A stretch of 64,000 nt of DNA, from assembly GCA_021613535.1 (NCBI GenBank), contig CP075493.1:15066001-15130000 (forward strand). The letters run 5' to 3'. How positions within the stretch are numbered: the stretch's first letter is position 1; each line of letters starts with the position of its first letter. The DNA is from Adineta vaga (Eukaryota; Animalia; Rotifera). Positions 1-26,438 of the stretch are shown here, piece by piece. The notes beneath the pieces were generated by a model. That model worked only from the letters and a program-made list of their open reading frames with translations. It was not told the origin of the DNA and ran no database searches. The translations under genes were made by a program, and so were the position numbers.

Positions 1-3000
1 TTAGTACTGATTGTCTTGATGGCAGTGACGAAGGTGAAGATCGTTACGCTCCAACTTCATTAAGAAATATGTTTTGCTCACTTACGTCCACATTTCGATG
101 TCAAGAACGTATTGGTCGATATCCTAAATCTTTTCAATGCGGTGATGGTGAATATTTACTTAATTATGTTCTACCAAATGATAGAACATTTTGTTTAAAT
201 GAGAAAGATAAAAAAGTATCTCTAGCGATACTAACGAGCATGGAACATATTTCAAATATTGATTGTCAAAAAGCATTCTATTGTGCGCTTCATGCCAATC
301 GAAAATTTGGTTACGGAGGTATAGATCATACAGGTATTGAATTATTTCTAATTTTGGAAGATATTAGAGATGAGGATTGTGAACCTTTATCTAAACATTG
401 TAAATCGGAATGGTTAGTTATACCTGCTGTTCCAGTTTTATTTGGATTCTTTCAATTTGTGTATTTTACTAATCGATCTGTGGATGATTTCAAAGCATCG
501 ATAGAACCTGATCTCGTATGTTTTCATGCACGAGCATGTCCTCGAGTGGTATTGGATATAGTTCCTATTCAAGTTACTAATGGATTAACATGTTTTTCTC
601 CTGTGAATTTCTCATTGTTTTATAAATTAAACAATTTTAATGATGCATTTGACATATTTTCACATTACAATCGATATTGTCGAACGACAGGTATTGAACA
701 ATCCTGTATCAATTCATTTGATTTCTATTGTAACGAATCGATGAAATGTATTTCATATAATCGCGTTGGTGATGTTCAATCTGATTGTTATTACGGCGAA
801 GATGAACAATTTGATGCATGTCATTTGAACGATTCAAATCGATTTAAGTGTTCATCAGAGCCAAATAAATGTTTATTACAAGTTGCAACTGGTGATAACA
901 TAATCAATTGTCGTGGAGAAGAAGACGAAATGTTTGCTTATACTCAACATTTCTCTATATTATTACCTTATGCATATATATGTGATGCGGATTCACATTT
1001 GTACAGTTATTTCTATACAATGAATGATACAGATGAATCGAATTGTCATTGGTGGCCTTGTAATAATCCCTACACACATTGTAATCAATTATGGAATTGT
1101 CCAAATGGTATTGATGAACGTAACTGTCCGGATTCAAAATGTTCTTTTAATGAACATGAATGTTATAATCAACAATCGAAATCATTTTATTGTATATCCT
1201 TAACGAATATTTATGACAAATACTTTAATTCATGTAATGAAACATCTTTTGAACGTAATGTTTACTTTTACAATGGAACAGATGATATTAGTAAAGATTA
1301 CTTTTCTTGGAATAATAGTCACTGTCTAAATTTCGATAAACTCTGTCGAATGAATTCTTATTTAGAAATATCATCTTCCGAAGAAAACATTTGCCTGTAT
1401 CCATCCGAAAATTTCTATTGAACGATTGAAAAAACCATCAAACTTATTCCAAATGATGACTATCTTTGTGAATCTAAAATAGCTTTTCGTGGAAATACTC
1501 TTCCTTTTTTCAAAACATCTCGACTAGGATATTCTCCATCGTTATCAATAAATCAGTCGAATTCAGTTCAACTTCAAACAACTCCAATGAAAAAACGCAT
1601 ATTAAACATGGATACTGAATCGATTTCCTATTGTCATCGTGGTATTCTCGTGTTACGTGGTTCAAATCAAACAAAAACATGTTTCTGTCCACCGAATTAT
1701 TTCGGATCTCAATGTCAATGGCAAAATCAACGTGTTAGTTTAACTATTCAATTCGTATGGCGTAGTATGACATATCAAATGGCAATATTTGAAGCAATTA
1801 TTATGCTTATTGATGAACATGGACAAATTGAACCATATCATGAACGAATTACTTATATGCCCGATCGTGATTGTAATATAAAATACAATCTTTATTTACT
1901 TTATCCAGATCGACCAAAATCTTTATCAAAGAATTATTCAATTCGTATTGATATTTATGAAAAAATTAATTTAATCTATTGGTTAAGTTGGTATCTACCT
2001 ATATCTTTTCGATTTTTACCGGTTAATCGAATTGCTACTCAAATACCAATTTCCGAACTACCAAATCACAATTCATGCTCTCTTACGTGCGGTGAACATG
2101 GTAAATGTATGAATTATATCAATAACAAATCATTAGTTTTTTGTTTATGCAACGATGGATATTCCGGTACTTATTGTAATGTTAAACATGCATGTCATTG
2201 CTCAGATGATTCATTCTGTTTGACTTCAACCATATGTATTTGTCCATTGCATAAGTTTGGTTCATATTGTCATTTCAAGCATTCGATGTGTCAAACAACA
2301 AGCAACAATTCATGTGAACACAGTGGAGTTTGTATTCCAAGTGATGATCGAATGAATTTAACAGATTTTACTTGTTTGTGTCCAGAATATTATTCCGGAG
2401 AACGATGCCAAAATATAAATAGTCGAATTGATGTACATTTAAATAAAGACATACGATCTAGTACATCGTTAGTATTAATACATTTCATTACAGCATTTGA
2501 TCACACTGATCATCAACGAAGAACTCAATTAAAAAAGATTTCTTACAATCAAAAGATTTTAACAATTTATGCCACTCAACCATTCCATATACTTTTTGTA
2601 CAAATACCAAATCAATATTATTATTTAACAGTACTTCGAGAAGTATTTCAACCTGCGGAACATATCAGTACGGAAATACAATTGAAAAAACGTTGTTTTT
2701 CAATCGATCAACTACTGAACGAAACTTTTCAACAATATGAATATTTACGACGAGTGAAATATTATCCATTATTATGTCGAAAGAATCTCGAATTAGAATG
2801 TTTTCATGATTAAGAACATATATGTTTATGTGATCAAGATCGATTTGCTAATTGTTTTCTATTTAATCATACAAGCAATAACAATTGTCAAGGTTATAAT
2901 TATTGTGAAAATCAAGGTCAATGTTTTCAAGATAATGCAACATGTCCAACAAAACTGACATGTATCTGTCGGGATTGTTATTATGGTGGTAAACGTCAAT

Positions 3001-3998
3001 TTTCAACGAAAGGTTTTATATTTTCCCTTGATACGATTCTTGCCTATCATATTAAACCAAAGATTTCACTGACTCAACAATCATTCATCGTTAAAATAAG
3101 TATTCTTATTAGTACGATTCTGTTGGTCGTTGGAATAATCAATGGTTTATTAGCATTTGTTACATTTCGTCGAACTAAAGTTAGACAAATGGGAAGTGGT
3201 TATTATCTTTTATCTTCATCGATCGTTTCAATATTGACAATAATTACATTAACATATAAATTTTGGTTATTAATCTTATCTCAAATATCACTTATAACTA
3301 ATGTAACTTTGCTTCATTTCAATTGTATTACAATCGATGTTCTTCTTCTAATTCTTCTTTCATCAAGTGAATGGTGTAATTGTTCTGTATCGATTGAAAG
3401 AATGTTTAGTGTTATTATGGGTACTCATTTTCGAAGAAAGAAAAGTGTCAGATTTTCTAAACGGATCATCATAATTATATTTATTTTGGTAACATCGACA
3501 CATATGCATGAACCATATCATCGTCAATTGATTGATGATTTTGATATTGATGAACATCGAATTTGGTGTTTTGTTCGATATTCATCTTCGATTCAAAAAT
3601 ACAATTCATTTATTACTCTCTTTCATTTTCTTACACCTTTTTCAATTAATATCGTTTCTTCTCTTTGGATGATTATTCAATTAGCTTATAGACGACGTGG
3701 TGTAGAACGTGGTCAAACAATACAACATCATTTAAGACATCAAATTCAACAACATCAACATCTTTTATATTCACCTTTGATATTAATATTATTAAGTTTA
3801 CCTCGTTTGATCATTTCATTTACACGTACTTGTATGAGATCAACACGGGAACCATGGTTATTTTTGATTGGTTATTTCCTTTCATTCGTACCATCAATGT
3901 CAATATTTATTGTTTTTGTATTACCATCAAAAACATACAAGACAGAATTCAATGCAGTCATCGAAAAAGTGTTAAAAAAATTTCGTACAGCGCAGTAA
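1..3998 (+). pseudogene. LDLa/EGF-repeat rhodopsin-type GPCR (5' end outside window) with two in-frame stops
   Basis: ORFs 69-1421, 1587-2813 and 3123-3998 share one frame, broken only by TGA 1419-1421 and TAA 2811-2813, and the sequence between them stays open and Cys-rich. LDLa (DCLDGSDE, NCPNGIDE), EGF repeats and a 7TM region with SIER are present. An expected EGF Cys reads Arg (YYGGKRQF). Confidence 0.75.
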
Positions 3999-4187
3999 TC
4001 TTATAAAAATCGCTTCATTCTCTATTTGCTTTGTTCATCTTGATTCACTTCGGTTTTTCAGAATATTAAAGAGGTTGATAATTACAATCGACGCCATATG
4101 TATGAGTTATTCGATATATTGGTCTATGTGATAGGTAGAAGATTTGTGAAGTATGTGAAAGGATAAAACAAGAAAAGATAACTTAGA

Positions 4188-5238
4188 TCATCCTCTAACA
4201 GGATTGCCAGTACTCGTAATCGTTGCAGGATGAATTAAACGTCTTCTTGTTCCAGTTAAAGCCCAACATTGTTTTCGAAAACTACGGTTTGATAATATTG
4301 AAACGTAGAAACTTCCAGCAGCAAATAAATAGGATGATAATCGAACAAAAACAATAATCAAATCTTCTACAGCAATTTGGAAGGATGATTTTATCCATTC
4401 ATCCGTAAACATAAAATAGAGCGAAAAAGCTCCAAATGGAACATAATTAATAATAGCAATAATTGACTGTAGAAATAACATAATTGTTAACTGTGAATCC
4501 ATCTCGTGATTAGGTGTTTGACTATGAAGAGCCGCACGTCGTTTAGCCATACTACGAATATTATACCAAAGTAGACTTGCCAGTATGATAACAAGCAAAG
4601 GAGAACCTATTGCCGAAAGAGATACATCCAGATAAGTATCAAAAGTTCGATAAATTCCTTGTTGCGACCAACAAAATCCATCTATAACCGTATAATAAAT
4701 CAATCGATGACCGCTGAGCACTAGCCAAAGAAGAGCGTTTAATACTATAATTTTGTAAGCTAGTGGAACACGGTTACTCCATTTTCGTAATTCTAGAAAA
4801 AAAGACTTAAATGAAGATAATAAAATATTAAGTACTATGCTTACTGGCTGAACGTTGTACACATAGAATTCTGTCCAATGCAGCATATAAGAACAATGTA
4901 TTTTCATTTTGATACATAAATAATGAAATAAATTCTCGAATTCTACAGAATGGTTCTGATGCACTCATCAATGGTATATGAAAGCTATTTTGTAATATGC
5001 GTGTTAACAGTATACAATCAAGAATAAATAAACTAGCAATTGTTTCCCAGAATAAATAGATAAAACAAGCTTGTCGACGATATGCTTCGGATCGAAATAC
5101 AAGTATATTTCCAACACATCCGATGTTTCCAGCCACTAATAGAAAGATTCCACCATAGGTCATTATATGAATACTAATACTTGTGATTGTACTTTCAAAA
5201 GTACTAGTTATTGTGTCCGTTGTTGTACTATTGCTCAT
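4188..5238 (-). CDS. Rhodopsin-like GPCR, 2 exons
   Basis: Start MSNSTTT at 5238. GT-AG intron 4793-4844 joins ALDRILCVQRSA to KLRKWS in frame. GN motif in TM1 and SFYV in TM7. Confidence 0.85.
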
Positions 5239-5978: not shown

Positions 5979-6338
5979 TGTTCTCAAAGTCAATGTTGTT
6001 ATTTTACGAATCAATAAACGATTAGTAAAGTATTAAATAATCCGAATAAATTATCGTTTATATCTGAACGAACTGGTGCCACTTGTTCAACAACGAAATA
6101 CGAGAATATTATAGATTTTCCGAACGGTTCTTCTTTCATGGATTCAACAGGTCCAAGATCAATAATCTGGGTAATAAATAAAAATAATACCGCTATTGCT
6201 GCCGTCGATTATCAATATACGAATTGTACATCCGAAACAATAAATATAACAAACTCAAGTATTAAAAATAATGTTTACACGATATATATGATCATTATGA
6301 TTAACTTCGTTGTATTAATCAAATGGTTTTATGTATAA
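5979..6338 (+). pseudogene. Possible remnant exon of a small Cys-containing protein with hydrophobic C-terminus
   Basis: After an AG acceptor at 5976-5977 the frame reads CSQSQCCYFTNQ*TISK... and runs into ORF 6138-6338, which has a hydrophobic tail. One in-frame TAA. Confidence 0.3.
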
Positions 6339-7345
6339 AAACAAAACTAATAGTACTTGGAAATTTAAGGGTGTGAGTAATTTATTCGTGTATCATCCAC
6401 AGCCTCAAAATAAAATATATTGAATAAAAATTGCTACGAGATAAATAATGTTTGTTTTCTTCATTGTGAGAATTCCCAAGATTCATCTTATTTTTAGTTA
6501 CGATTTTTGATTGAAATAGAAGGAGGTATATTTTATTGTTATTATTTATCATAGAAAACTAAACAACTCATTTGTGAGCATCTTGCGCATTTTTAGCGAT
6601 TGTATAGGTTGTAGCATTATGATTAGTTCGACGAATTGTAAGTGGAAGGATATTTCTATACTTATATCAATCGAACTATAGTCACAGATTGCCAATGGTT
6701 TATTGATGATCGGATTGGTACCTAATGGACGCCAAACGTTGATTATTTGAAACCAATTTTGTCTTACCTTTTCACTCTCTTCTATGTCAAAACAATCATC
6801 TATCCATTCTCGAGCTGTAATTAGATCAGCGTCGACATGAGGATGAAATACCGGATTTCTATAAGTATCGATGAGGGTGGGTGTGAGTGTATATAAATTT
6901 GTAAAAAGGCGCCCGCACCCTCAAGGTGCAAATAAACGATTTTGATATTTTTTGCTGTTGTAACAATTGTTGTTTTTGCTTGTTTTCTAAATTGATCATT
7001 TTCTGATAACAAAAAGGTTCATTATTTAGATATTGTATGATTTCCAATGCCCATTCATTACAGTTCATAAATATGCACGTAATGTGTCTTCGCTTACGAA
7101 TTGTATTTATGACTAATAAAGTCTAAATGTTTATCGATTGAAAAAAATATCTATGAGCACTTTTTTGAAATCGTCATTTATATTCGAAGTCGAATTAGAC
7201 AGCTACTCGATTATATTATTTATTTATTTCAAATGTGTAAAAATATGGATATTCTTTGGAACTTTCATTAACAGTTTTGAAGGAGATTTGAAGTACCATG
7301 AATGAACATTATTTAAAAGTATTAAAAAAAATTAAATAAAATAGT

Positions 7346-8943
7346 CTACAACAATTCATACTTCATTACTTTCCCATTGGCTAAGAACGCATACATATTC
7401 ATATGTGAATCAAATGCAATATCGACTGGATCATAATTTGTTGTTATAACAACGTTACCCACCGTTGAGTTAACACAATACATCACTATTCGTGAATTAC
7501 TCATGTCTGCAACATACAAATTACCTTGCGGATCTCGTTTCATGCCTCTGGGGTTGCTGAGTGTTAAAGGACTACTAATAACATTGGTATAAGTTACATT
7601 GGGTGTTGAGTCTCCAAATATCCATAAAAACACATTGTTACCGCTTTCATCACTCATATATATTTGATTTGGTGTGCCATGTGGAAGTAAAAGTGCAGAC
7701 AATCTGGCGACGTAACTACTAGTATTAATAACAGTGATCAAACTCGATGCATTCGGAGCTAATTGTACCACTCTCGTGGCAGATTGATCCGCAATATAAA
7801 GATTAAAACTGTCATCAATAGCAATACCCGTAGGATGACTAAGAGTACCACTGACAGATGATCCCGTTCCAGCAACGATTGTTCCGCTGGGAGAGCCTGG
7901 TGCGTAGTTACGTACTCGATCGGAAGCGTGATCGTTTGTATACATGTATCCAATTTTATCAAATGTGATATAATCAATGTGATCACCATAGATTACTGTT
8001 GCTGCACTCGTGGTTGTTCCGTTACTTGGACACATGAGTACTTGTCCAATGTTATGGCCACTAAGGTAGATGATGTCAGTCGAATCTATGTAAATACTTG
8101 TAGGGTTTGATATAGAACTTGAACTAGTGCCAGCAACAGCAATACCAGTTTGATTCCAGCAGTAATTCGTACCTTAGGGAATTGATGTATTAGATAAATG
8201 TAACTAAAATTGGTAGAAATATTCACATGAAGTACATCCGGTCGTGGTAGTCGTTGTACTAGCAGTACTTGTTGTCGTTGTTGTTGTTGATGTCGATGTT
8301 GTTGCAGTACTTGTTGTTGTTACTGATGTTGTTGTGCTGGTACTGCTTGTTGTCGATACTGATGTGGATGTCGCTGCACTAGTTACTGATGTCGTTGTCG
8401 TTTGTGTTGATGTTGATGTTGTAGTGGTAGTGGTGACGGTTGTACCTGTTGATGTTATTGTAGTTGTTACTGATGTTATTAGATAAAAATATTCATTCAA
8501 TATTATACAACTCTCTTTCTCTCATAATAGTTCACTTACCTGCTGGTTGTGCGTTTGTATTTATGCCATTTTGGGAATTATGTGCTAAAATTTGAGAAAA
8601 AAAAACTAGAAGCACTTGTATACTACACCAACATCCTTACTTGACAGCGGTTTTAGCCACAGTGTTAAGATAACAGCTAAACCGATACTTGCAACTAGCG
8701 CACCAATTAATAAACCAACTAAACATGCTTTACACTCGAAACAACATAGGATATAACCTGCTGCACGCCTAGATTGATTATTGATCAATATAACGGAACA
8801 TAATATAAATTAGTGTATGATATACTTTGTATCACTGTATTGATCATCGTCATCATCCTCATTGCAAACGTTGATTGATTGTTGTTTCAATGTCTAAAAT
8901 AATTTCATATCGACTAAGTATCATTCATAACGTTACTCACCAT
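7346..8943 (-). CDS. Membrane-anchored NHL-repeat (beta-propeller) protein with Thr/Ser-rich stalk, multi-exon
   Basis: ATG at 8943 followed directly by a GTGAGT donor. TM exon ~8640-8760, Thr-rich exon ~8235-8480, last exon with NHL repeats (LSHPTGIAID..NLYIAD, LSNPRGM..NLYVAD). Confidence 0.8.
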
Positions 8944-9071
8944 TTTGATTGTATTAAGTCTTTTCAGATTCTAAACAATTGAAAAGTATCGGTTTTATTC
9001 TGAAAGATTTTTTTTCATAATAAAAATATTCGCTCCTAGACAACCCTTGAAAATAACAAGAAAAAATCGTG

Positions 9072-9074
<3 letters not shown>

Positions 9075-9101
<27 letters not shown>
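9075..9101. repeat. (TA)n microsatellite
   Basis: Uninterrupted TA run. Confidence 0.9.
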
Positions 9102-9105
<4 letters not shown>

Positions 9106-9732
9106 TTATTTATTTCTATGTCATCTTTTTGGAGTAACTCAATCCGATAATTGAAATTCTGTTTTCTTCCTTAATAATGACATATGTTTCGATTGGGTTT
9201 CCAAGTAGCATAATGTTTATACAATTTCATCGCTCGATGCAAATTCTGTTTGACAAATATTGAAACAAAATATTGTTTGAAATTGAAAGTTTTCTTCGAG
9301 AAAAATGAATAGTCTGAGAAAAGATGAATGCGAAATGAACATGAAAGTTGATAAAGCATCAATTAATCCTATATTTTCAATATAACCTCTAATGAATAAA
9401 TCATGTGTGATGTTGTTTACGAAAATGAAGCTGAGGGTGTGAGTGGCCACTCAATTTCATCCTCATACCTATACCCACCCACATGCACACCCTCAACCTA
9501 TGTTAGCAAAGATATTCTATTTCTCGAGTATAAGTAATTTATACGATCTACACGATCATCCAACTTTAGAAGATCGCACATTAGTTGCACTTACTAATAA
9601 CTACACTCTCAAGTTTATTTTAAAATGTGTTTAACAAAACTACAAAGCAAGGTTCATATACAAAGTGATCTATGATAGTATAAGAGATTTCTAATATAAA
9701 CTACTGTAGAAGCAATGAAATGTTTCATTAGT

Positions 9733-12700
9733 TTAAACCGATGCTGAACATTCGATAAATCTTGGATTAAATGATTGAAATGGATATTTTCTTGTCTTAT
9801 TACGTTGATCAATATCTTTCGATAAATTTCTTAAATCATTTTTAAATTCTTGATAATTCTTCAAATTTTTTTGATAATTTTGATCATGTTCAATTAAATG
9901 ACTCCAATCTTCTAATAATCCAGGCATTCGTAAACCAGTAACAACAGTTAAAATAAGTATTTGTGTATATGTTTGAATATTTTGCATTTCTTTTCCTTCT
10001 TGTAATTTTGCTCCAATAAATCGTGGATCAATCATATAACCACTAATTTGACCAACATGTTCATGTATACCAGTACTATCAGCAATCAATTGTGATAAAA
10101 CATCAACAAAACGTTTCAATGAAGTAATACCAGGTATTCCAAGTTGTTTGCATAGATCATCAATAAAATTCATCATATACGAATCGACTGGTAATTTATC
10201 ATCGGATAAATTCGTTTCGACTTGTTCATCATCGATATCGATGTGTAAATTATAAGTTATTTCGAAGAAATTTGCAACATATTGTTGTATAATTCTCCAA
10301 AACTCTTTAATATCCAAATAAATTGGATAGACTTTATCCCATTCTTTCTTTTCCGCATCACCTTTCGGAAACATTGATGGAGAAATAAATTCTGGTAATA
10401 ATCGAAATTTATAATTTGTTGATATATAATCACAAACTTTCAAAAATTCATCATAATCAAATGCCCATATTCGATGAACTAGACCACGTCGATTGACTAA
10501 TGACATTGCTGCTTGATAATTAACTGAAATATTATGATATGTAAATGGTTTAAGAAATGATCTTAATGGATGATCTACTGGTAAACATTTTCGTGTTGCA
10601 GTAACAAATGCATTACATTCGATCATATGTGTAACAATGAGATGATCACATATGGTTACATATGCAAAGAATGATGAACGCCAAACATATTTTGCATGTT
10701 CCCAAAATTGATCATCTTTTTCAACTAAACGATTAGCATGACACCAATAAATAGCAATCAATTGAAAATCTTTATCGAAATATGCAGCTGCTCCATAACG
10801 TTCAAATGGTTTTCGTACATTAAAAATCGATAAAACTGTCATATCATTAACATAGAGTGCAGCATTGTCTAAAGATCTTTGTTCCGGTATTCCAAATCCT
10901 GGTTTCCATTTACCTTCAATACGTTGAGTATAATGACATGCACAGCCAAAAAATGCTAATCGACTCATGGCTTCATCGGAGAACATATCGGTATAAACAA
11001 TATTTGGTAAAGGTAATGCAGGAAAGATCTTTGAACTCCATGCAAGTGCTTGTTCTAATGTTTCAAATTCAGCTAAACAATCATAAAAATCCCAAAGAGT
11101 ACTGTTAACTAACCAACGAGCAAATTTTCTTGATAAACCTGAACCATCTGGTTCATCTTCATCCCATGATGGAATAAATTTTGCCATATCAATTCGAATT
11201 ATTCCAAGTTTTTCGATCGGTAAATTCAATGGTGGTCTTATATCAATAGCACGTGATGGAGATGTATTGGATTCTTTAACAGCTGTTTTCATTAATAACC
11301 AAACAAGTTTTGTATATGTATCTAATGTTTTCCAACATCGACGCTTTTCTGTATCATTTAATTTTCGAATTTTTCTCTTGAATAAAACCATTTCTTTTTC
11401 ATTGGAATCATTTTTCTCTTCTTCTTCTTGATCAGATGATGAACTTTGTTTTTGTTCATCGAAATCATCGATAATTGGTAAAAATCGTTCAGCAACATAT
11501 TGAATAACATCAAGAGCTAAATCATGTCCTGGACAATAACGTATTGGTCGTTTAGTTCGATCTGGATTGATAATATCTTCTTCAACACCATTCCAAACAA
11601 TAAGTTTGTTTAAATCTGATCGATCGGGTAAGAATTCTTCAGGATTTTGAAAAATAGTTTCATCACGATTTGCATTAACAAGTGAACAATGAATCGGTGT
11701 ATTTTCCGGTATGTGAATATGTTCATTTTGAATTTCATTGATAATTTCATTTGTTGCTAAGACATTCACTGTCGGAACAACTTTATCAAGTCGTGCACAT
11801 TCTTTAATGAAATTATGTGGATTCTTCTTAAATAAAGGAACATTTTTTTCCTTATCTGTCCATAATCGATCAATAACTGTCACTGCTAATTTTGCCGGTG
11901 CTGGACTTCCAGCTACACAAAAGACGACGGTAATAAATTTGAAAATTTCTTCACGAGATTTTTTCATTTCAGCTGCAGCTACAGCAGCTTTAAAAGCTGG
12001 TCCATTTTCATATCGTGAAAATGCTTGAAGAAGAGTATAATAACTACGTAAATTCTTCCGTTCAAAATAATGACCATTTAATAAGAAATTAAACCAATTT
12101 GGAAAGAATATCAATGGATTTTTAACACAATCAATAAAAGCTGAACGTTCTTGTTTTGTTAATTCTCCATTTGTTGCTAAGAAAAACATAACTTCACCAA
12201 CTGCTTGATAAACTAAATCATCCGTTGGTTTTTCATTCATTTGACGTGGAAGAATTCGTGCTAATTGTAATCGTGTTTCGAAATTTCCATTTTGTAAATT
12301 ATGAGGAAATGCATGTAACCATTGAAAGATTATCTTTCGACCTAATTGCATATCAGGATCGTCTGTAGAAAGAAAAATGGTTGTAAAATTACAAAATGTT
12401 TTCAATGATTGTGAAACTTCCCATGCTAATAATTCACAATCTTTACGTGGTCGAAGTTCTTGAACAAATCGTTTAACTAATTGATATGAATTCACAGCTA
12501 AACCATTACCCAAAACAAAATAAGGAGAATTATAAACATGACGAAAATAATCTTCTAATGATTTGAATAAATAAACAGGTTGTGCAGAATTCGAAATATA
12601 TTCAATAAATGTAGCGAATTGTAAGAGAAGAGATTTCAAATGCCAAAGATGATTTCGTTTGTCAATCGATGTATTGAGTAATGTTAATCTCATATTTGCT

Positions 12701-13434
12701 GTAACATTACGAACAAATTCCGGAACTTTTTTACTCGGTGATGGTGATGATGATGGTGGTGTTCGAGATTTATAGATAATTCGACAATAAATTATTAGAA
12801 TAAAATAAGCAGGTAAAACGATAGTAAATAATGTTAATAATCCAATAATTCCAAGTAGAAAATAAGAGATTGTACGTAATGGTTGAGGTAATTTATCAGC
12901 AAATCGAACAATGTGAGAATTATTGAATAAATGCGTTTTAACGTGAAAATTTTCAATAAAACCTTGACCTCGTTTGATAACAATTCGTTCATTGGTTCGA
13001 TATGTTTTTAAAAACGTATATTTTATCAAATGATAGAGTAAGAAACCAAATGGTGCTGCTAGATAAGTTATAAAAAGAAGAATTGTAAGAAGAATTCTTC
13101 CAGATGTCCATGATTTATTTGTACCAGTATAGGCAAATGTATATCCTGTATAAAAATCATATACCATCCATCGAGCAACCCATAAATCCATTACAGAAAG
13201 ATGATTTCTACTATCATTGAATGATATTTTCCAAATAGATAAATTCCATTGAGAAATATTCAAATCTCGAAAGAATAATATAAATGTATATTCTATCGAT
13301 AATAATAAAGCAGGTAGAAGAATTAAATATCTGGAAAGTTTATGAAATGGTGCTAAGATTAATGCAAACCATCCGATAAGAATAATATGATTTAATTTAA
13401 ATAGATTTTCCGATGTAAAAATATCCAATGCCAT
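9733..13434 (-). CDS. Fusion protein: ABA4/DUF4281-like membrane domain + CYP74-like cytochrome P450 + lipoxygenase
   Basis: Single 1233-aa ORF. N-terminus has HLSVMDLWVARWMVYD..APFGFLLY. P450 part has ExxR (KECAR), ANRD..F.NPEEFLPDR and heme Cys in VWNG..RYCPGHDL. LOX part has W..AK, HLIVTH, HPL..FLKP, TGIHEHVG and C-terminal ECSASV. Confidence 0.85.
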   Translation of the reverse strand: MALDIFTSENLFKLNHIILIGWFALILAPFHKLSRYLILLPALLLSIEYTFILFFRDLNISQWNLSIWKISFNDSRNHLSVMDLWVARWMVYDFYTGYTFAYTGTNKSWTSGRILLTILLFITYLAAPFGFLLYHLIKYTFLKTYRTNERIVIKRGQGFIENFHVKTHLFNNSHIVRFADKLPQPLRTISYFLLGIIGLLTLFTIVLPAYFILIIYCRIIYKSRTPPSSSPSPSKKVPEFVRNVTANMRLTLLNTSIDKRNHLWHLKSLLLQFATFIEYISNSAQPVYLFKSLEDYFRHVYNSPYFVLGNGLAVNSYQLVKRFVQELRPRKDCELLAWEVSQSLKTFCNFTTIFLSTDDPDMQLGRKIIFQWLHAFPHNLQNGNFETRLQLARILPRQMNEKPTDDLVYQAVGEVMFFLATNGELTKQERSAFIDCVKNPLIFFPNWFNFLLNGHYFERKNLRSYYTLLQAFSRYENGPAFKAAVAAAEMKKSREEIFKFITVVFCVAGSPAPAKLAVTVIDRLWTDKEKNVPLFKKNPHNFIKECARLDKVVPTVNVLATNEIINEIQNEHIHIPENTPIHCSLVNANRDETIFQNPEEFLPDRSDLNKLIVWNGVEEDIINPDRTKRPIRYCPGHDLALDVIQYVAERFLPIIDDFDEQKQSSSSDQEEEEKNDSNEKEMVLFKRKIRKLNDTEKRRCWKTLDTYTKLVWLLMKTAVKESNTSPSRAIDIRPPLNLPIEKLGIIRIDMAKFIPSWDEDEPDGSGLSRKFARWLVNSTLWDFYDCLAEFETLEQALAWSSKIFPALPLPNIVYTDMFSDEAMSRLAFFGCACHYTQRIEGKWKPGFGIPEQRSLDNAALYVNDMTVLSIFNVRKPFERYGAAAYFDKDFQLIAIYWCHANRLVEKDDQFWEHAKYVWRSSFFAYVTICDHLIVTHMIECNAFVTATRKCLPVDHPLRSFLKPFTYHNISVNYQAAMSLVNRRGLVHRIWAFDYDEFLKVCDYISTNYKFRLLPEFISPSMFPKGDAEKKEWDKVYPIYLDIKEFWRIIQQYVANFFEITYNLHIDIDDEQVETNLSDDKLPVDSYMMNFIDDLCKQLGIPGITSLKRFVDVLSQLIADSTGIHEHVGQISGYMIDPRFIGAKLQEGKEMQNIQTYTQILILTVVTGLRMPGLLEDWSHLIEHDQNYQKNLKNYQEFKNDLRNLSKDIDQRNKTRKYPFQSFNPRFIECSASV

Positions 13435-13484
13435 TATGATTAATTATATCTAGAAAAAGAAAAGATTAGTTTTATTCAAACTTT

Positions 13485-15221
13485 TCAATATCGATTTCCT
13501 TGAACAATATAATTCTCATAAAAATACACAAATGCTTTATAATCTTCTTCAGTCTTTAATACTTCCCATTCTTTATCAAAGATTCCAACAAATTTTCCAT
13601 CATCTAACGCCATAGATTTTGTCATTTTATAATTTAATTTCATTCGACGTATATTACTAAATTTCGCCAAATTACTTCCAATTATTTCAATAAAACTACG
13701 TGGTGCATCCATCAATGTATTCACCAAATAACCTTTATTCATTATCCATCCAAGATAACCACCCCAAGTCGATGGTGATAATGTTGTATTATAACAACCA
13801 GTACCAATAGAAAGTAAATGATAATTTGCCGGTTTCTTCCATTGCATTCGAATTGCCCATAGGGCAGATAATTCCGGATCATTAGCAAATACACCACCAT
13901 CAATAAACAATTCCGATGGGCCATCCTTTTCAAATTGATCATTTACTTTTTTTCCTGTAGAAATTTCCATTGGTGGAAAATAAGTTGGAGCAGCCATTGT
14001 TGCTTTTAAAACATCAGCAATACGATAACCCCAATGTTGAGAATAACTCGTATTAAATATCATAATACTATTCGTTGTTGTATTATATGAAGTAATAAGT
14101 AGAACTTTTTCACGATTAATTCTATGAAAACTATAATTTTCAGTAATTCGATGGACATTATCATCGATATTCTTAATATCATCAACAAATTCTAATAAAT
14201 TTCCATGATTTGAAGCAGCACGTAATTGAGCTTCTTCATTTGTAATAATCTTTTCTGGATTTAAGATATTACGTATATCAAGTAATGTCGCATTTTCCGC
14301 TGATAATTTTGTTCCATCTTTAAATGTAAGACTATTAATAATATCATCAATCTTTTGATGTATACGTGCTGGATTATATTTAGAATAAATGATTGGTCCT
14401 AAATAATTTCGCCAGAAATAATGAGAATATTTTGCATAAATATCCATCATTTCTAATATACTATAATTCATTGCTAAACAAAAAGCAATTAGACCACCTG
14501 TACTTGTTCCAACAAAATAATCGAATTGTTCAGTAAATTTAATTTGAGCTTTTTCAAATAATTTCTTATGTTCAATATTACGTGAATCAAGTGGTTCATT
14601 TAAAGACAAATATTTTTGTGTAACTAATTGAGAAATGATTTTTATTGGCATATAACCACGTACACCTATATACGAATAAGAAAACAAAATCAAAGAATTG
14701 TAATTATTTAAATTCATCTTACCTCCACCATCTAAACTTAATACACGTATATTTCGTTCATGTGCTTCTAAATGATATCTTGCAAGTAAGGAATCTAATC
14801 CATGCCATTCGATATCTTTTGTTGATGAAAGATTTTTCATTTTTTCTAATTGATCCATAACAATTGACATATCATAATCATTACAAATTTTCTTTTCTTT
14901 TTCTATACGTTTTAAATGTTCTTCTCGAATTTTATTTCGAACTGTTTGTCCATTGATTTCAGCTTGTTCAACTAATATCCATTCAATGCAATCATTTGTA
15001 ATTAATCCATGTTCAGAAAGTTCAATATGTCTTTGTAAATGATCGTTACGAACACTATCTAATAGTTGATTGTATTGTAATTGACCACATGTATGACATA
15101 AATCAAATATTTTGCAAATTTTACATTGTCTCCAAGCAACATCATCAATAGTAATACCACAGTGATCACAACGAAAATGTGTAGAAATTTCACTGGCTGA
15201 TTTCATAAGACGCGACGCCAT
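13485..15221 (-). CDS. Patatin-like phospholipase with N-terminal ZZ-type zinc finger
   Basis: CDHC..CKIC..FDLCHTC zinc finger. Removing the 57-nt GT-AG intron 14666-14722 restores LSLDGGGVRG. GTSTG nucleophile, AAPTYF and DGG catalytic Asp present. Likely start MASRL at 15221. Confidence 0.9.
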   Translation of the reverse strand: MASRLMKSASEISTHFRCDHCGITIDDVAWRQCKICKIFDLCHTCGQLQYNQLLDSVRNDHLQRHIELSEHGLITNDCIEWILVEQAEINGQTVRNKIREEHLKRIEKEKKICNDYDMSIVMDQLEKMKNLSSTKDIEWHGLDSLLARYHLEAHERNIRVLSLDGGGKMNLNNYNSLILFSYSYIGVRGYMPIKIISQLVTQKYLSLNEPLDSRNIEHKKLFEKAQIKFTEQFDYFVGTSTGGLIAFCLAMNYSILEMMDIYAKYSHYFWRNYLGPIIYSKYNPARIHQKIDDIINSLTFKDGTKLSAENATLLDIRNILNPEKIITNEEAQLRAASNHGNLLEFVDDIKNIDDNVHRITENYSFHRINREKVLLITSYNTTTNSIMIFNTSYSQHWGYRIADVLKATMAAPTYFPPMEISTGKKVNDQFEKDGPSELFIDGGVFANDPELSALWAIRMQWKKPANYHLLSIGTGCYNTTLSPSTWGGYLGWIMNKGYLVNTLMDAPRSFIEIIGSNLAKFSNIRRMKLNYKMTKSMALDDGKFVGIFDKEWEVLKTEEDYKAFVYFYENYIVQGNRY

Positions 15222-20410: not shown

Positions 20411-23400
20411 TTATGGTTCATAGTTTATAAATGAAAATTGCTCAAGAAATAAATCTTTGTCGGTCATAAATTTCACAGCAATCTCTTCAAGCCACTTGAC
20501 AAAGTCTTCATCATGTGCATGTACAATATTATGTGCCAGTTCATGACATGTGACCATAAAATAAAAATTGACGATTGTGTGTATAATAGGAGTTGATGGG
20601 GAAGATATTCTAAGATAAGGTTTTAGTTCATCGGCATATACCTGTTCGAAATAACGAAGATTAAAGAAAAGTGATCCTCCATAATTGAATGCTATTTTTG
20701 CTAAACAACAAAATGCCGAAGAAAATTAAAGGAAAGGATTATCTACTCTTACTTCCATTGATATCTCGAAAAAGATGTATTGTTTCATAAGCCATGTTGA
20801 AAACACGAGTAGCAAGACCTTTAAGAAGATAAGCAAGTTGATATCCTTGATCGATCATTGCGTTTGTTATGATCACATTTTCTTCAACATATAACGGGAT
20901 TGAATGAAAAACCATATCAAAACGTGTCATATTCTCCGAGGGAATTTGTTCACATATAGTATTAATCTCTGTTTTTGTATATGGTAATCGAATGAGTTTC
21001 GAATGATTATAGGCTTGACTTTTGCGAATCTTTTTCATATAATTTTGGCTTTCTTTCTTGTTACGTCCAAAATCTGGCATCGGAGTAGGTTTATGAAATG
21101 AATGGGTGTGCGTAGTATAGTCACCTCCAACACCTATGATCGGAGAAATTTGATGGTTTTGATCAGTAGCTTTACGACCATTATGAGCAGCTGTAGTCGG
21201 ACCAGCTTTAGGTTGATGGTTATTCACATCAGGAGAAATGCTACTATTTTTTCCTTTTCGACCAAATGGCAACCAGCTGAAAACAAATAGAATTAAATTA
21301 AATTAAGTTAAGTTAATCTATTAAGAATAAACAGTGAGTCCAAAGGTTGCATGAATCAATGTCAGATGAAGATTTATATATCTATTCTTCTGTCTTAGAG
21401 ATCATATATGAAAAGATGAATTCAATGTAAACAGAAATGATGATAGTTATTTAAAAAACTCTTGAAACCCCCCAAAGATTGTACATGACTGCTCAAAAGT
21501 CTCCGAGAAATATCTAAATACTGACCTGCGTAAGTTTTGAAGAAACGTGGATTTCTGACGTGGTTGTTGCTTTTGTTGTTGTTGTTGTTGTGGTGGTGGT
21601 GGTGGTAGTTGGCGTCCCATTCCGTGTACGGAAAACAATTCTAAAAACTTATTGCTTGCTATTAATTAAATTCTGTATGCTAGTTTAACTGACCTTCTGT
21701 GTGTGTACTTTGGAGCAAACGATCAACAGGAATACCTCTTCGTCTGAGTATTTCTATGGATAATCCAAGTTTATCACTGATGTCATGTACGTAATTAACT
21801 TCTCTTATAAAACAAAATGCATGTATCTCAGCTGCAATATCGTAATAATCTATGTTAGTTATATCTTTTCGAAGATATAACATCACGTTCTTCGTATCAT
21901 ATACAAGCATACACCAACTCGCATTTTCCGACTATAATTTCGAGTGAAATCAGAATATTGAAAACAAAAATACTAGTATATTGGTTCTTACGTCAAGTTG
22001 AATAGTTTGGTTTTTAAAAGTCAATACACTTTTGATATGATCGACTTCATAGATTGAAAGTGTTGTACGTAATAGTTTGATATGTTCTTCGATACAACCT
22101 TCGAGACGTTCTTCCTAAAAGAGAATACTTTTTGAAATTGAACTAGTCGTGAATTGTGCAAAAATAATTACCCGATTATTGACAAATAACATTGGAAATC
22201 GATATTGAATCAAAGCTCGTAATTCATTGGTTTTCACGGAAGTGACTGGTTTACCTTAAATACACAACAAAAGAAATCAATTGTATTTCTCGTTTATTCT
22301 TGAATATTTTTCAAAACAGATTCTTTATTCATAATACTATGTAAGTGAAGGATGTAATATGAGCTGTAAAACTATTGATCAGATCAAACTGTACCTATGC
22401 ATGTTCTTGTTTTTGTGACACAATCAGATAACCATTTTGCTCCGAAGTGTTGATATAGTGTAGGTAATTGTGATATTTTTGGTGGTAATAATGGTCGAAA
22501 TTTTTCTGCACACATCGGACTATCATCAAGATATATTTCATCTGGTTTAACAATTTCAAATATTTGCTCTCTTGTTCCATTTTCATGATCAATATTACGA
22601 AAACCAAGGCACCAAGCACTAGTTTTCAGTCGCGTGTATAACGGTTCCTGTTGAAGCTCATTTGAACAAGTATAAGCAACTATAAGTTCTTTGAGACAAT
22701 TAATATATACACGCATCTTCTTATTCAACATGTCTTTGTTGCCTTCTGCACTTGCAAAATATCTAGCCTGTCGGTCAATCATAAGTTCGGCAAGAGCTGA
22801 AGATTTAGGATGATTGACAACACCAATAGTAAGAAGAAATGCATTGGCATCAACACCAAAATCAACATAATCAATAAGACCACTTGTATCTATATCAGTG
22901 ATTTCGTCCGTATCAGTTTTACTAGATGTATCAGCATTTGAACGAATAAAAACTTGTGATGGTTTCGTCAATATCGTATTGTTCGAAAGATCTAAATGAA
23001 TTTAATACAAGTCTGTTATCTTTCCAAATATATAAACTAACCTTGTATTGGAATGAAATTACTATTCGATACTTTTTTGATAAATGTTTGATCTATTCCT
23101 TGGAGTCTATTTAGATAAGCAAATATCTTCGGTGCTGATTGTTTTGTTAAAAAATTTGTTGATTTTCCCAATAAAGTATCAAATGCTTTTGAAAGACTTG
23201 GATGCTCTCCGATGTCAAGAGACGAATTAATGAAATTTTTCTGGAATAAAATAAGCACTTCTGGTAAAAGACTAGGACATAATGGATTTACACTTTTGTA
23301 TACTTCATCTGGTGCTAAGAGTACTACATCATTATCGTTGTTATTTTCGGGTAAATATGATGGTAAAAAACGATACTGTCTGATTGTATCCAATTTCCAT

Positions 23401-26400: not shown

Positions 26401-26438
26401 AATGCTCTTAATCGAAGATCATCTCGTGATAAGGACAT
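20411..26438 (-). CDS. Sacsin-like GHKL ATPase / DUF3684-type protein with C-terminal HExxH motif, multi-exon
   Basis: VEVNQRMLIDKMLARYS..RELIQNSDDA, NNG and GQFGVGFFS (GHKL); IFIGLGTHQTTG..IPTIERE; last exon FFNLRYFE..CHELAHN; stop TAA at 20411-20413. Confidence 0.85.

What the first reader, a model, noticed from the sequence alone, without database searches (positions are those of the whole stretch)
9733..15221. Phospholipase plus LOX-P450 fusion: a two-gene oxylipin pathway cluster
Seen: a patatin with intact GGxRG, GTSTG and DGG motifs lies directly upstream, on the same strand, 50 bp from the fusion gene. Established: lipase, LOX and CYP74 are the consecutive steps of oxylipin/jasmonate-type synthesis. 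Inference: a self-contained lipid-signal or chemical-defence system in an animal genome, with gene order matching the first step of the pathway.
Basis: partly seen in the sequence, partly recalled or inferred. Interest (0 to 1): 0.88.

Follow-up and report, generated by a model that had tools for sequence, protein, structure and literature searches.

The report
Rotifer lipase plus P450-lipoxygenase operon
In a bdelloid rotifer, a bacterial-defence-type lipase gene and a three-part membrane-anchor/P450/lipoxygenase gene are transcribed as one unit and cut apart by trans-splicing. This looks like a small lipid-signal pathway, but the pairing exists only in a few Adineta species and the P450 is not of the plant CYP74 type.

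Summary
A 559-aa patatin (13485-15221, minus strand) ends 50 bp upstream of an intronless 1233-aa ABA4-like/P450/lipoxygenase fusion (9733-13434).

New here:
- Both genes are expressed. The patatin's 57-nt intron, which interrupts DGGG|VRG, is spliced out in RNA-derived contigs.
- The fusion mRNA carries the rotifer spliced leader at the AG 16 nt before its ATG, and one spliced contig spans both genes. The pair is therefore an operon-like unit.
- The same pair with a 50-bp spacer exists in A. ricciae, and both genes are under purifying selection (dN/dS 0.075 and 0.13).

Against a conserved pathway cluster:
- No intact patatin lies beside the other two A. vaga copies, the A. ricciae homoeolog, or the Rotaria, Didymodactylos, metagenomic-rotifer and two non-bdelloid loci examined.
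- A. steineri keeps only a decayed, inverted patatin remnant.

- The P450 is a divergent orphan. No CYP74 affinity appears in sequence or fold rankings.
- The patatin is of the CBASS CapV effector type (E 7.8e-46).

P450-LOX fusions also occur in amoeboid protists, and no paper describing them was found. The lipase-to-LOX-to-P450 reading is plausible but unproven. The same stretch was noted elsewhere in this scan (s1-505210, s1-505507).

The parts
13485..15221 (-). Patatin gene CDS (559 aa after splicing; A. vaga I4U23_004989). Exon 1 is 14723-15221, exon 2 is 13485-14665 including the TGA stop at 13485-13487. An RNA contig begins at 15234.
   Evidence: ORF; sequence; spliced model equals P0038; Pfam Patatin 4e-18; PADLOC CBASS phospholipase effector PDLC00758 E 7.8e-46; PDB best hits are CapV-type patatins.
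14666..14722 (-). In-frame 57-nt spliceosomal intron (GT..AG) that interrupts the oxyanion-hole motif DGGG|VRG.
   Evidence: Sequence. The 57-nt skip is present in contigs of runs X1, X5 and X11 (table 5).
15027..15170 (-). N-terminal ZZ-like zinc-finger pattern (CxxC...CxxC...CxxC...HxxxH, residues 18-65), followed by a charged, probably coiled region up to about residue 160.
   Evidence: Cys/His pattern read directly. The Pfam ZZ match is weak (E 0.044 on the N-terminal piece, below cut-off), so this is an inference.
14496..14510 (-). GTSTG nucleophile elbow (catalytic Ser). Its partner, the Asp of DGG, lies at 13893-13901.
   Evidence: aligned to the CapV catalytic regions.
13435..13484 (-). 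50-bp intercistronic spacer. AATAAA is at 13471-13476, the polypyrimidine tract at 13452-13464, and the trans-splice acceptor AG at 13450-13451. The 15-nt 5'UTR (13435-13449) follows.
   Evidence: Sequence. The X1 contig ends at 13451 with the loose letters CTTGGTAAG, whose reverse complement CTTACCAAG plus the genomic AG gives the 3' end of the rotifer SL GGCTTATTACAACTTACCAAGAG (PMC3795323 Table 1). X11 contig 3 crosses the spacer. The X6 patatin contig ends at 13449. A. ricciae also has a 50-bp spacer with GATAAA and polyY-AG.
9733..13434 (-). Intronless 1233-aa fusion gene (P0001), with its stop codon at 9733-9735.
   Evidence: RNA contig X1 covers 9650-13451.
13033..13392 (-). ABA4-like (DUF4281) multi-pass membrane domain, residues 15-134. 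Hydrophobic segments lie at residues 10-30, 35-56 and 111-137. A further TM segment at 185-223 (12766-12882) and a Pro/Ser hinge (12733-12759) come before the P450.
   Evidence: Pfam PF14108 at 21.6-23.1 bits, below the 27-bit cut-off here, but above it in homologues P0159 and P0163. Hydropathy scan.
11365..12732 (-). Divergent cytochrome P450 domain (residues 235-690). Motifs: ExxR (ECAR, 11791-11802), PERF-like (11620-11643), extended Cys loop WNGVEED...RYCPGHD (11521-11595), and I-helix VAGSPAPAK without the acid-alcohol pair (11890-11916).
   Evidence: Pfam p450 at 27.2 bits. Alignment A2 shows the motifs are invariant. AF2 model pLDDT 81.8. VIA Z 24-25 to bacterial P450s. Foldseek, ESM Atlas shape search TM 0.75.
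9736..11262 (-). PLAT-less 'mini' lipoxygenase domain (residues 725-1233). Metal ligands: DHLIVTH (10627-10647), IHEHVGQ (10048-10068, with Gly where canonical LOX has Asn/His), and C-terminal Val (ECSASV, 9736-9753).
   Evidence: Pfam LOX at 33.6 bits. PDB profile E 1e-18 to FgLOX with residue alignments. Model and Foldseek TMq 0.6-0.68. Family-wide motif alignment.

Best explanation
This is a spliced-leader-resolved two-gene operon specific to the Adineta lineage of bdelloid rotifers.

Shown:
- One transcription unit runs through a CapV-type patatin lipase gene and, 50 bp later, a gene for a membrane-anchored ABA4-like/P450/lipoxygenase fusion.
- The patatin message ends at about 13449, roughly 20 nt after AATAAA.
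- The fusion message is capped by trans-splicing of the rotifer SL at the AG at 13450/13451.
- The three fusion genes are the only lipoxygenases in the genome.

Inferred:
- The LOX domain has three His ligands and the C-terminal Val carboxylate, with Gly at the weak fifth-ligand position. It oxygenates a polyunsaturated acyl chain to a hydroperoxide.
- The fused P450 lacks the I-helix acid-alcohol pair needed for O2 activation. It rearranges that hydroperoxide into an oxylipin such as an allene oxide, epoxy-alcohol or chain-cleavage product. This is by analogy with the coral catalase-LOX and fungal DOX-P450 fusions.
- The patatin plausibly supplies free fatty acid.

That last link is the weakest. 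The juxtaposition is evolutionarily labile, so the pair is best seen as a lineage-specific co-expression unit, not as a conserved, self-contained pathway cluster. The P450 is not a demonstrable CYP74.
For: Anatomy and motifs.

Expression and processing:
- The intron is removed in X1, X5 and X11.
- The X1 fusion contig ends in CTTACCAAG+AG, the 3' end of the rotifer SL (sequence from PMC3795323 Table 1).
- X11 contig 3 (5477 nt) is spliced and spans both genes.
- The X6 patatin contig ends at 13449.

Conservation:
- A. ricciae has patatin at 6220-7950 and the fusion at 8001-11831, also a 50-bp spacer with polyY-AG.
- The flanking genes are not collinear between the two species.
- dN/dS is 0.075 for the patatin and 0.13 for the fusion, at dS about 0.9-1.2.

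Folds: P450 Z 24-25; LOX TMq 0.6-0.68.

Catalytic residues:
- LOX ligands are invariant across 25 homologues and in protist relatives.
- The P450 Cys loop and ExxR are invariant, and there is no I-helix Thr.

Other:
- All 3 LOX loci in the genome are fusions.
- The same P450-LOX architecture occurs in Soliformovum, Acrasis and Bolivina. A fusion kept in such distant lineages suggests the two domains work together.
Against: No intact patatin lies next to:
- the A. vaga C5 and C6 fusion copies;
- the A. ricciae homoeolog;
- the R. sordida, Didymodactylos and JGI-rotifer loci;
- the non-bdelloid loci L029 and L030.

The closest Rotaria and Didymodactylos patatins stand alone. A. steineri has only a frameshifted remnant on the opposite strand, so the fusion works without this neighbour.

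From my own knowledge, metazoan operons usually do not group functionally related genes.

Logan contigs cannot prove that a single RNA molecule spans both genes.

No biochemical data exist for any member. The LOX lacks the canonical Asn/His fifth ligand. The class and reaction of the P450 are unknown. The patatin belongs to a family known as membrane-degrading immune effectors.
Confidence: 0.6

Rival explanations
1. Fortuitous operon. The two genes are co-transcribed only because a rearrangement put them in tandem in an Adineta ancestor. The patatin acts in membrane turnover or immunity, independently of the P450-LOX enzyme, which obtains its substrate elsewhere (other lipases, or esterified lipids directly).
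For: The pairing is absent at 8 other bdelloid loci and 2 non-bdelloid loci, and it is decayed in A. steineri. About 11 patatin loci exist in the genome. From my own knowledge, genes in animal operons are mostly functionally unrelated.
Against: The prior for a lipase landing next to one of only three LOX genes is about 0.002. The pair and its 50-bp spacer survived to dS of about 1 while the flanks rearranged. The A. steineri remnant shows that the neighbourhood is older than the A. vaga/A. ricciae split.
Confidence: 0.35
2. Immune module. The CapV-type patatin is a nucleotide-signal-activated lipase, as in bacterial CBASS. When triggered, it attacks membranes, and the co-expressed P450-LOX converts the released PUFA into a danger or defence oxylipin.
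For: PADLOC CBASS phospholipase effector model E 7.8e-46, against Pfam Patatin 4e-18. The top PDB hits are cGAMP-activated CapV structures. Two Mab-21-domain loci exist in the genome.
Against: There are no SMODS/CD-NTase hits. The Mab-21 loci are unlinked and may be developmental Mab21 genes. Nucleotide-binding residues were not examined. The N-terminal ZZ-like extension suggests a different mode of regulation.
Confidence: 0.1
3. The P450 domain is an ordinary monooxygenase (fatty-acid epoxygenase or hydroxylase) that uses a redox partner and acts in parallel with the LOX, not on its hydroperoxide. Alternatively, the LOX domain is a non-catalytic lipid-binding module, because it lacks the Asn/His ligand.
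For: The nearest structural neighbours are class I bacterial monooxygenases. There is no CYP74 signal. Gly replaces the fifth LOX ligand in the whole family.
Against: The I-helix lacks the acid-alcohol pair (VAGSPAPAK). No reductase or ferredoxin domain is present. The three His and the C-terminal Val/Ile are conserved from rotifers to protists under strong purifying selection (LOX dN/dS 0.10). From memory, the soybean LOX-1 Asn694Gly mutant keeps activity. All known natural dioxygenase-heme fusions process the partner domain's hydroperoxide.
Confidence: 0.15

Closest known systems
Coral (Plexaura) and cyanobacterial allene oxide synthase-lipoxygenase fusion proteins (PDB 3DY5, 3FG1)
   Same: One polypeptide carries an N-terminal heme domain and a C-terminal LOX. 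The LOX domain of the model superposes on coral 8R-LOX. The presumed logic is that the hydroperoxide is made and converted on one chain.
   Different: The heme domain here is a cytochrome P450, not a catalase relative. There is an extra N-terminal ABA4-like multi-pass membrane domain. There is no PLAT/C2 domain. Gly replaces the Asn/His fifth ligand.
Fungal dioxygenase-P450 fusions (PpoA, linoleate diol synthase, 9S-DOX-AOS; cited in PMC10813956)
   Same: A fatty-acid dioxygenase is fused to a P450 that isomerises the hydroperoxide without a reductase.
   Different: In the fungal proteins the dioxygenase is a heme peroxidase/COX-like domain and lies N-terminal. Here it is a non-heme-metal LOX and lies C-terminal.
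Plant LOX -> CYP74 (AOS/HPL/DES/EAS) pathway and metazoan CYP74-clan enzymes (PMC8124189, PMC10813956)
   Same: The proposed chemistry is lipase, then LOX, then a hydroperoxide-transforming P450. The I-helix lacks Thr, and the Cys loop is lengthened (28 residues from PERF to Cys).
   Different: No CYP74 entry appears in the PDB profile, Foldseek or VIA rankings. The catalytic I-helix Asn is not evident. In plants the enzymes are separate proteins.
CBASS CapV cGAMP-activated patatin phospholipases (PDB 8ZR9, 9KH6, 9WN0)
   Same: They are the best HMM and PDB matches. The Ser-Asp dyad and the C-terminal region are conserved.
   Different: The gene is eukaryotic and has a spliceosomal intron. It has a roughly 160-aa N-terminal ZZ-like and charged extension. 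There is no adjacent cyclase. It forms a multi-copy bdelloid family.
SL-resolved operons of nematodes, tunicates and chaetognaths (PMC1657053, PMC12460157), especially C. elegans SL1-type operons with no intercistronic gap
   Same: The genes are on the same strand with a very short spacer. The downstream mRNA is SL trans-spliced. The upstream poly(A) site is about at the acceptor.
   Different: This is in a bdelloid rotifer, where I found no operon catalogue in the searched literature. The two cistrons have a plausible biochemical link and non-metazoan-type ancestry.

Membership tests
Patatin-like phospholipase (PF01734) | Oxyanion hole G-G-x-R/K-G, GxSxG nucleophile, D-G-G/A catalytic Asp, and HMM score above cut-off. 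| tested here: met
   DGGGVRG (after intron removal), GTSTG and DGG are present. Pfam score is 66.8 bits against a 27.7-bit cut-off.
CBASS CapV-type effector phospholipase | Sequence membership in the CapV clade. | tested here: met
   PADLOC PDLC00758 E 7.8e-46, 154.9 bits. The top PDB hits are CapV/CBASS patatins at E 8e-15.
CBASS CapV-type effector phospholipase | Genetic linkage to a CD-NTase and activation by a cyclic nucleotide. | tested here: not met
   No cyclase was found among the window ORFs scanned (only some were scanned). There is no SMODS hit in the genome. Two unlinked Mab-21 loci exist. Activation itself cannot be tested with these tools.
Lipoxygenase (PF00305) | LOX catalytic fold, with the His-x4-His pair, a third His and the C-terminal Ile/Val carboxylate as metal ligands. 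| tested here: met
   Foldseek TMq 0.6-0.68 over the whole domain. HLIVTH, the H of IHEHVGQ and the C-terminal V are aligned to known ligands and are invariant.
Lipoxygenase (PF00305) | Fifth ligand Asn/His/Ser four residues after the third His. | tested here: not met
   Gly occupies that column when aligned to FgLOX. The position falls in a 2-residue deletion when aligned to human 12-LOX. This holds family-wide, including the protist members.
Cytochrome P450 (PF00067) | P450 fold, Cys-ligand loop (RxCxG), ExxR and PERF. | tested here: met
   VIA Z 24-25, rmsd 3.4-3.7 A over about 340 residues. RYCPGHD, ECAR and PEEFLPDR are invariant. Pfam score is 27.2 bits against a 22.8-bit cut-off.
CYP74 clan (AOS/HPL/DES/EAS) | Closest sequence or structure relatives are CYP74 enzymes. 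| tested here: not met
   None of the 61 PDB profile hits at E<=1 is an allene oxide synthase or other CYP74. None appears in the Foldseek top 50 or VIA top 50. The Atlas neighbours are bacterial P450 clusters.
CYP74 clan (AOS/HPL/DES/EAS) | No I-helix Thr, a catalytic I-helix Asn, and an insertion in the heme-binding loop. | tested here: inconclusive
   Thr is absent (VAGSPAPAK), and the PERF-to-Cys distance is lengthened to 28 residues. No Asn is evident at the expected place. No CYP74 sequence was available by reference for a direct alignment.
SL-resolved eukaryotic operon | Same strand, short intercistronic distance, downstream mRNA SL trans-spliced, and RNA continuous across the spacer. 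| tested here: met
   50-bp spacer. SL 3' end on the X1 contig at AG 13450/13451. The spliced X11 contig spans both genes. Caveat: contigs are not single molecules.
Conserved metabolic gene cluster | The pairing recurs in relatives and in paralogous copies. | tested here: not met
   The pair is intact only in A. vaga C1 and the A. ricciae ortholog. A. steineri has a remnant. It is absent at 8 other bdelloid loci and 2 non-bdelloid loci.

The most novel reading that the evidence does not exclude
An animal operon built from two genes of non-animal type. The first is a CBASS CapV-like lipase, regulated through a ZZ-finger or a nucleotide signal. The second is a member of an undescribed ABA4-like/P450/LOX family shared with amoeboid protists. 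Together they would form a trigger-to-mediator unit: the activated lipase liberates PUFA at a membrane, and the membrane-anchored fusion converts it in two steps to a new class of rotifer oxylipin used in wound, desiccation or infection signalling.
Probability: 0.15. Interest if true: 0.85.

Novelty: new variant of a known kind. Interest (0 to 1): 0.58.

Why it matters
If the coupling is real, this would be a rare animal example of a metabolic operon whose gene order follows the pathway. It would have been assembled from a bacterial-defence-type lipase and a protist-type oxylipin synthase.

It also offers a compact two-gene system in which to discover what oxylipins bdelloids make and why.

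Independently of the pairing:
- The P450-LOX fusions are the only lipoxygenases in the A. vaga genome.
- The architecture recurs in Amoebozoa, Heterolobosea and Foraminifera.
- No description of it was found in the searched literature.

It would therefore be a third, independent way of joining a fatty-acid dioxygenase to a hydroperoxide-processing heme enzyme, after catalase-LOX and DOX-P450.

The locus also gives direct sequence-level evidence for an SL-resolved operon in a bdelloid.

Tried and rejected
- **CYP74 membership: rejected as unsupported.** The PDB profile search, Foldseek, VIA second look and two Atlas searches all point to generic or bacterial P450s.
- **Conserved synteny across bdelloids: rejected.** This rests. 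A permissive tblastn for patatin remnants near the other fusion copies found nothing except in A. steineri.
- **Patatin next to non-bdelloid fusions: not found**.
- **Contamination or a non-integrated foreign contig: rejected.** The neighbours are animal GPCR, EGF, NHL and sacsin-like genes. GC is uniform at about 0.30. The patatin has a spliceosomal intron and the fusion is SL trans-spliced.
- **The ~700-aa 'P450-only' homologues as separate genes: rejected.** They end at the linker, where A. steineri and Didymodactylos have an intron or a stop. They are probably truncated prokaryote-style gene calls on metagenomic contigs.
- **Literature searches** for a rotifer LOX/P450 fusion, CYP74 with Adineta, and P450-LOX terms found nothing relevant.
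- **IQ-TREE via treekit** did not finish in time. The tree reported is FastTree only.
- **Complex prediction was not used**, because I do not claim that the two proteins bind.
- **How the spliced patatin was searched.** Database searches used exon 2 by reference, or the stored identical protein P0038. The joined CDS was assembled only inside local scripts, for coordinates, local tblastn and dN/dS.
- **Active-site geometry** of the models could not be measured, because coordinates are not exposed.


Full report
**Where the window comes from.** The window lies at 15.07 Mb on an 18.1-Mb contig of a 100.8-Mb, six-contig assembly. The spliced upstream protein is identical to Adineta vaga I4U23_004989. 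Neighbouring ORFs encode ordinary animal proteins: rhodopsin-type and Srw-type GPCRs, EGF, NHL and a sacsin-like protein. GC is uniformly about 0.30. The locus is therefore resident rotifer DNA.

**Observation.** Both ORFs are on the minus strand.
- The patatin CDS runs from ATG 15221 to its stop at 13485-13487.
- The fusion ATG is at 13434, which leaves exactly 50 bp between the two genes.
- GTSTG and DGG are intact.
- The oxyanion-hole motif is split by an in-frame 57-nt GT..AG intron (14666-14722). Only after splicing does it read DGGGVRG.
- The fusion is a single 1233-codon ORF.
- Pfam detects three parts in the fusion: ABA4-like (residues 15-134, just under cut-off), p450 (27.2 bits) and Lipoxygenase (33.6 bits).

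**Expression and RNA processing.** One read-laying run on four public runs gave Logan contigs that lack the 57-nt intron in three runs (X1, X5, X11). These contigs are therefore RNA-derived.
- *Trans-splicing.* In X1 the fusion contig (9650-13451) ends with nine non-genomic letters. Their reverse complement, CTTACCAAG, followed by the genomic AG at 13451/13450, reproduces the last 11 nt of the rotifer spliced leader GGCTTATTACAACTTACCAAGAG (PMC3795323, Table 1). The fusion mRNA is thus SL trans-spliced 15 nt upstream of its ATG, at an AG preceded by a polypyrimidine tract.
- *Upstream 3' end.* AATAAA lies at 13471-13476. In X6 the patatin contig stops at 13449 with seven unmatched letters. The upstream poly(A) site therefore appears to coincide with the trans-splice acceptor. 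This is an inference, because I could not see those seven letters.
- *Read-through.* In X11 a single 5477-nt contig is spliced at the patatin intron and also runs through the spacer into the whole fusion gene. Contigs are not single molecules, but this shows RNA reads that are continuous across the spacer.
- Together these are the defining features of an SL-resolved operon.

**The fusion protein.** An alignment of 25 homologues (A2) shows these P450 motifs:

| Motif | Sequence | Conservation |
|---|---|---|
| ExxR | ECAR | invariant |
| PERF-like | PEEFLPDR | invariant |
| Cys loop | WNGVEEDI..KRPxRYCPGHD | invariant |
| I-helix | (V/L)(A/G)(G/A)(S/A)xAPAK | no acid-alcohol pair |

- The AF2 model of the P450 domain (pLDDT 81.8) is clearly a P450: VIA Z 24-25, rmsd 3.4-3.7 A over about 340 residues.
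- Its best matches are small bacterial P450s (CYP109, CYP199, XplA, CypX).
- No CYP74 or allene oxide synthase appears among the 61 PDB profile hits, the Foldseek top 50 or the VIA top 50. Atlas neighbours are bacterial clusters. The 'CYP74' label is therefore not supported.
- What remains in favour of hydroperoxide chemistry is the missing Thr, a PERF-to-Cys spacing lengthened to 28 residues, and the fusion to a LOX.
- The LOX domain (A3; model pLDDT 72.7) superposes on human 12-LOX, the Cyanothece mini-LOX, Pseudomonas LOX and coral 8R-LOX at TMq 0.6-0.68. It has no PLAT domain.
- Three His ligands and the C-terminal Val align to known ligands and are invariant: HLIVTH, the first His of IHEHVGQ, and the terminal V.
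- The fifth ligand (Asn/His) is replaced by an invariant Gly, family-wide. From memory, the soybean LOX-1 N694G mutant retains activity, so I regard the domain as probably active.
- Four hydrophobic segments and a Pro/Ser hinge precede the P450.

**Distribution of the fusion.** The fusion is present in all sampled bdelloids in two old clades, at about 60-80% and about 38% identity to the query.
- The own genome holds three copies, on C1, C5 and C6. These are the only Lipoxygenase-family matches in the genome.
- An exhaustive profile search found the same architecture outside rotifers:
  - Soliformovum irregulare (Amoebozoa): ABA4-like + P450 + LOX.
  - Acrasis kona (Heterolobosea).
  - Bolivina argentea (Foraminifera).
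  - An EF-hand variant.
  - Many metagenomic proteins.
- I found no paper describing a P450-LOX fusion.

**The patatin.** Its best matches are CBASS CapV-type phospholipases: PADLOC PDLC00758 at E 7.8e-46, and PDB CapV structures at E 8e-15. It is not of the animal PNPLA or plant patatin type.
- It carries a roughly 160-residue N-terminal extension with a ZZ-like Cys/His pattern. The Pfam support for this is weak (E 0.044).
- It belongs to a multi-copy family found across bdelloids.

**Is the pairing conserved?**

| Locus | Patatin beside the fusion? |
|---|---|
| A. vaga C1 (this window) | Intact, same strand, 50-bp spacer |
| A. ricciae ortholog (79% identity) | Intact, same strand, 50-bp spacer with polyY-AG retained; flanking genes not collinear |
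| A. steineri (two assemblies) | Frameshifted, stop-containing remnant (residues ~234-406), about 1 kb upstream, opposite strand |
| A. vaga C5 and C6 copies | None |
| A. ricciae homoeolog | None |
| R. sordida, Didymodactylos, a JGI metagenomic rotifer | None |
| Non-bdelloid loci L029 and L030 (Acrasis kona) | None |

- Both genes are under purifying selection between A. vaga and A. ricciae: dN/dS 0.075 and 0.13, at dS about 0.9-1.2.
- The closest patatins of two Rotaria species and of Didymodactylos have no fusion beside them.
- A FastTree phylogeny groups (A. vaga C1, A. ricciae with patatin) as sister to (A. vaga C5, A. ricciae without patatin). Rotaria and Didymodactylos lie outside this group.
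- The neighbourhood is thus an Adineta-lineage feature that has been lost or has decayed more than once.

**Verdict.** The genes, the spacing and the motifs are real. The pair is an expressed, trans-splice-resolved operon, conserved as a unit in two Adineta species.
- The biochemical reading (lipase, then LOX, then a hydroperoxide-converting P450) is coherent. For the two fused domains it is supported by analogy with all known dioxygenase-heme fusions.
- The lipase link rests only on co-transcription, and it is weakened by the patchy distribution of the pairing.
- The CYP74 and jasmonate labels should be dropped, and the lipase should be described as CapV-type.

**Method notes.**
- Database searches of the spliced patatin used exon 2 by reference, or the stored identical protein P0038. 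The joined CDS was built only in local scripts.

Noticed in passing
L015:6675-7081 (minus strand; also L016), A. steineri: A decayed patatin fragment of the same family lies about 1 kb upstream of the A. steineri fusion gene. It consists of collinear HSPs covering residues ~234-406, with frameshifts and a stop, and it is in the opposite orientation.
   Followed up: yes
G000:C1:15076231, C5:3724387, C6:1297424: The only three Lipoxygenase-family matches in the whole 100.8-Mb genome are the three P450-LOX fusion genes. No canonical animal LOX was detected.
   Followed up: partly
P0163, P0175, P0254, P0169, P0159 (L029, L030): The (ABA4-like)-P450-LOX architecture also occurs in Soliformovum irregulare, Acrasis kona (annotated '12R-lipoxygenase', KAL0485054.1) and Bolivina argentea. 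An EF-hand-bearing variant exists as well. This suggests a protist family that bdelloids may have acquired.
   Followed up: partly
window 9733-13434 versus G000:C5:3724060-3727722: The synonymous distance between the two A. vaga copies (dS 0.44) is lower than between A. vaga and A. ricciae orthologs (dS 0.89), although the protein tree pairs orthologs with 100% support. Possible causes are gene conversion between homoeologs or saturation and codon bias.
   Followed up: no
L015:10064-10208 and L020:4335-4498: In A. steineri and Didymodactylos the fusion gene is interrupted in the P450-LOX linker. The ORF ends at L015:10139, which implies an intron. In A. vaga the gene is intronless. Metagenomic '700-aa' homologues end at the same point.
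   Followed up: partly
window 8204-8500 (minus strand): A Thr/Ser/Val-rich low-complexity ORF (mucin-like) lies next to the NHL-repeat ORF at 7346-8035. It may be an exon of the same gene.
   Followed up: no
window 22384-26438 (minus strand): A string of ORFs separated by 40-65 bp carries DUF3684, Sacsin and HATPase_c_3 matches. This is probably one multi-exon sacsin-like gene.
   Followed up: no
window 3123-3998 (+) and 4188-4964 (-): Two convergent GPCR-like ORFs (rhodopsin family and Srw type) lie downstream of the operon. The A. ricciae homoeolog locus L014 shares a gene that matches window 2165-4008.
   Followed up: no
G000:C1:16514915-16516090: A paralogous ZZ-patatin (52-59% identity, I4U23_005381) lies 1.44 Mb away on the same chromosome. 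It has no large ORF neighbours and no fusion gene beside it.
   Followed up: partly
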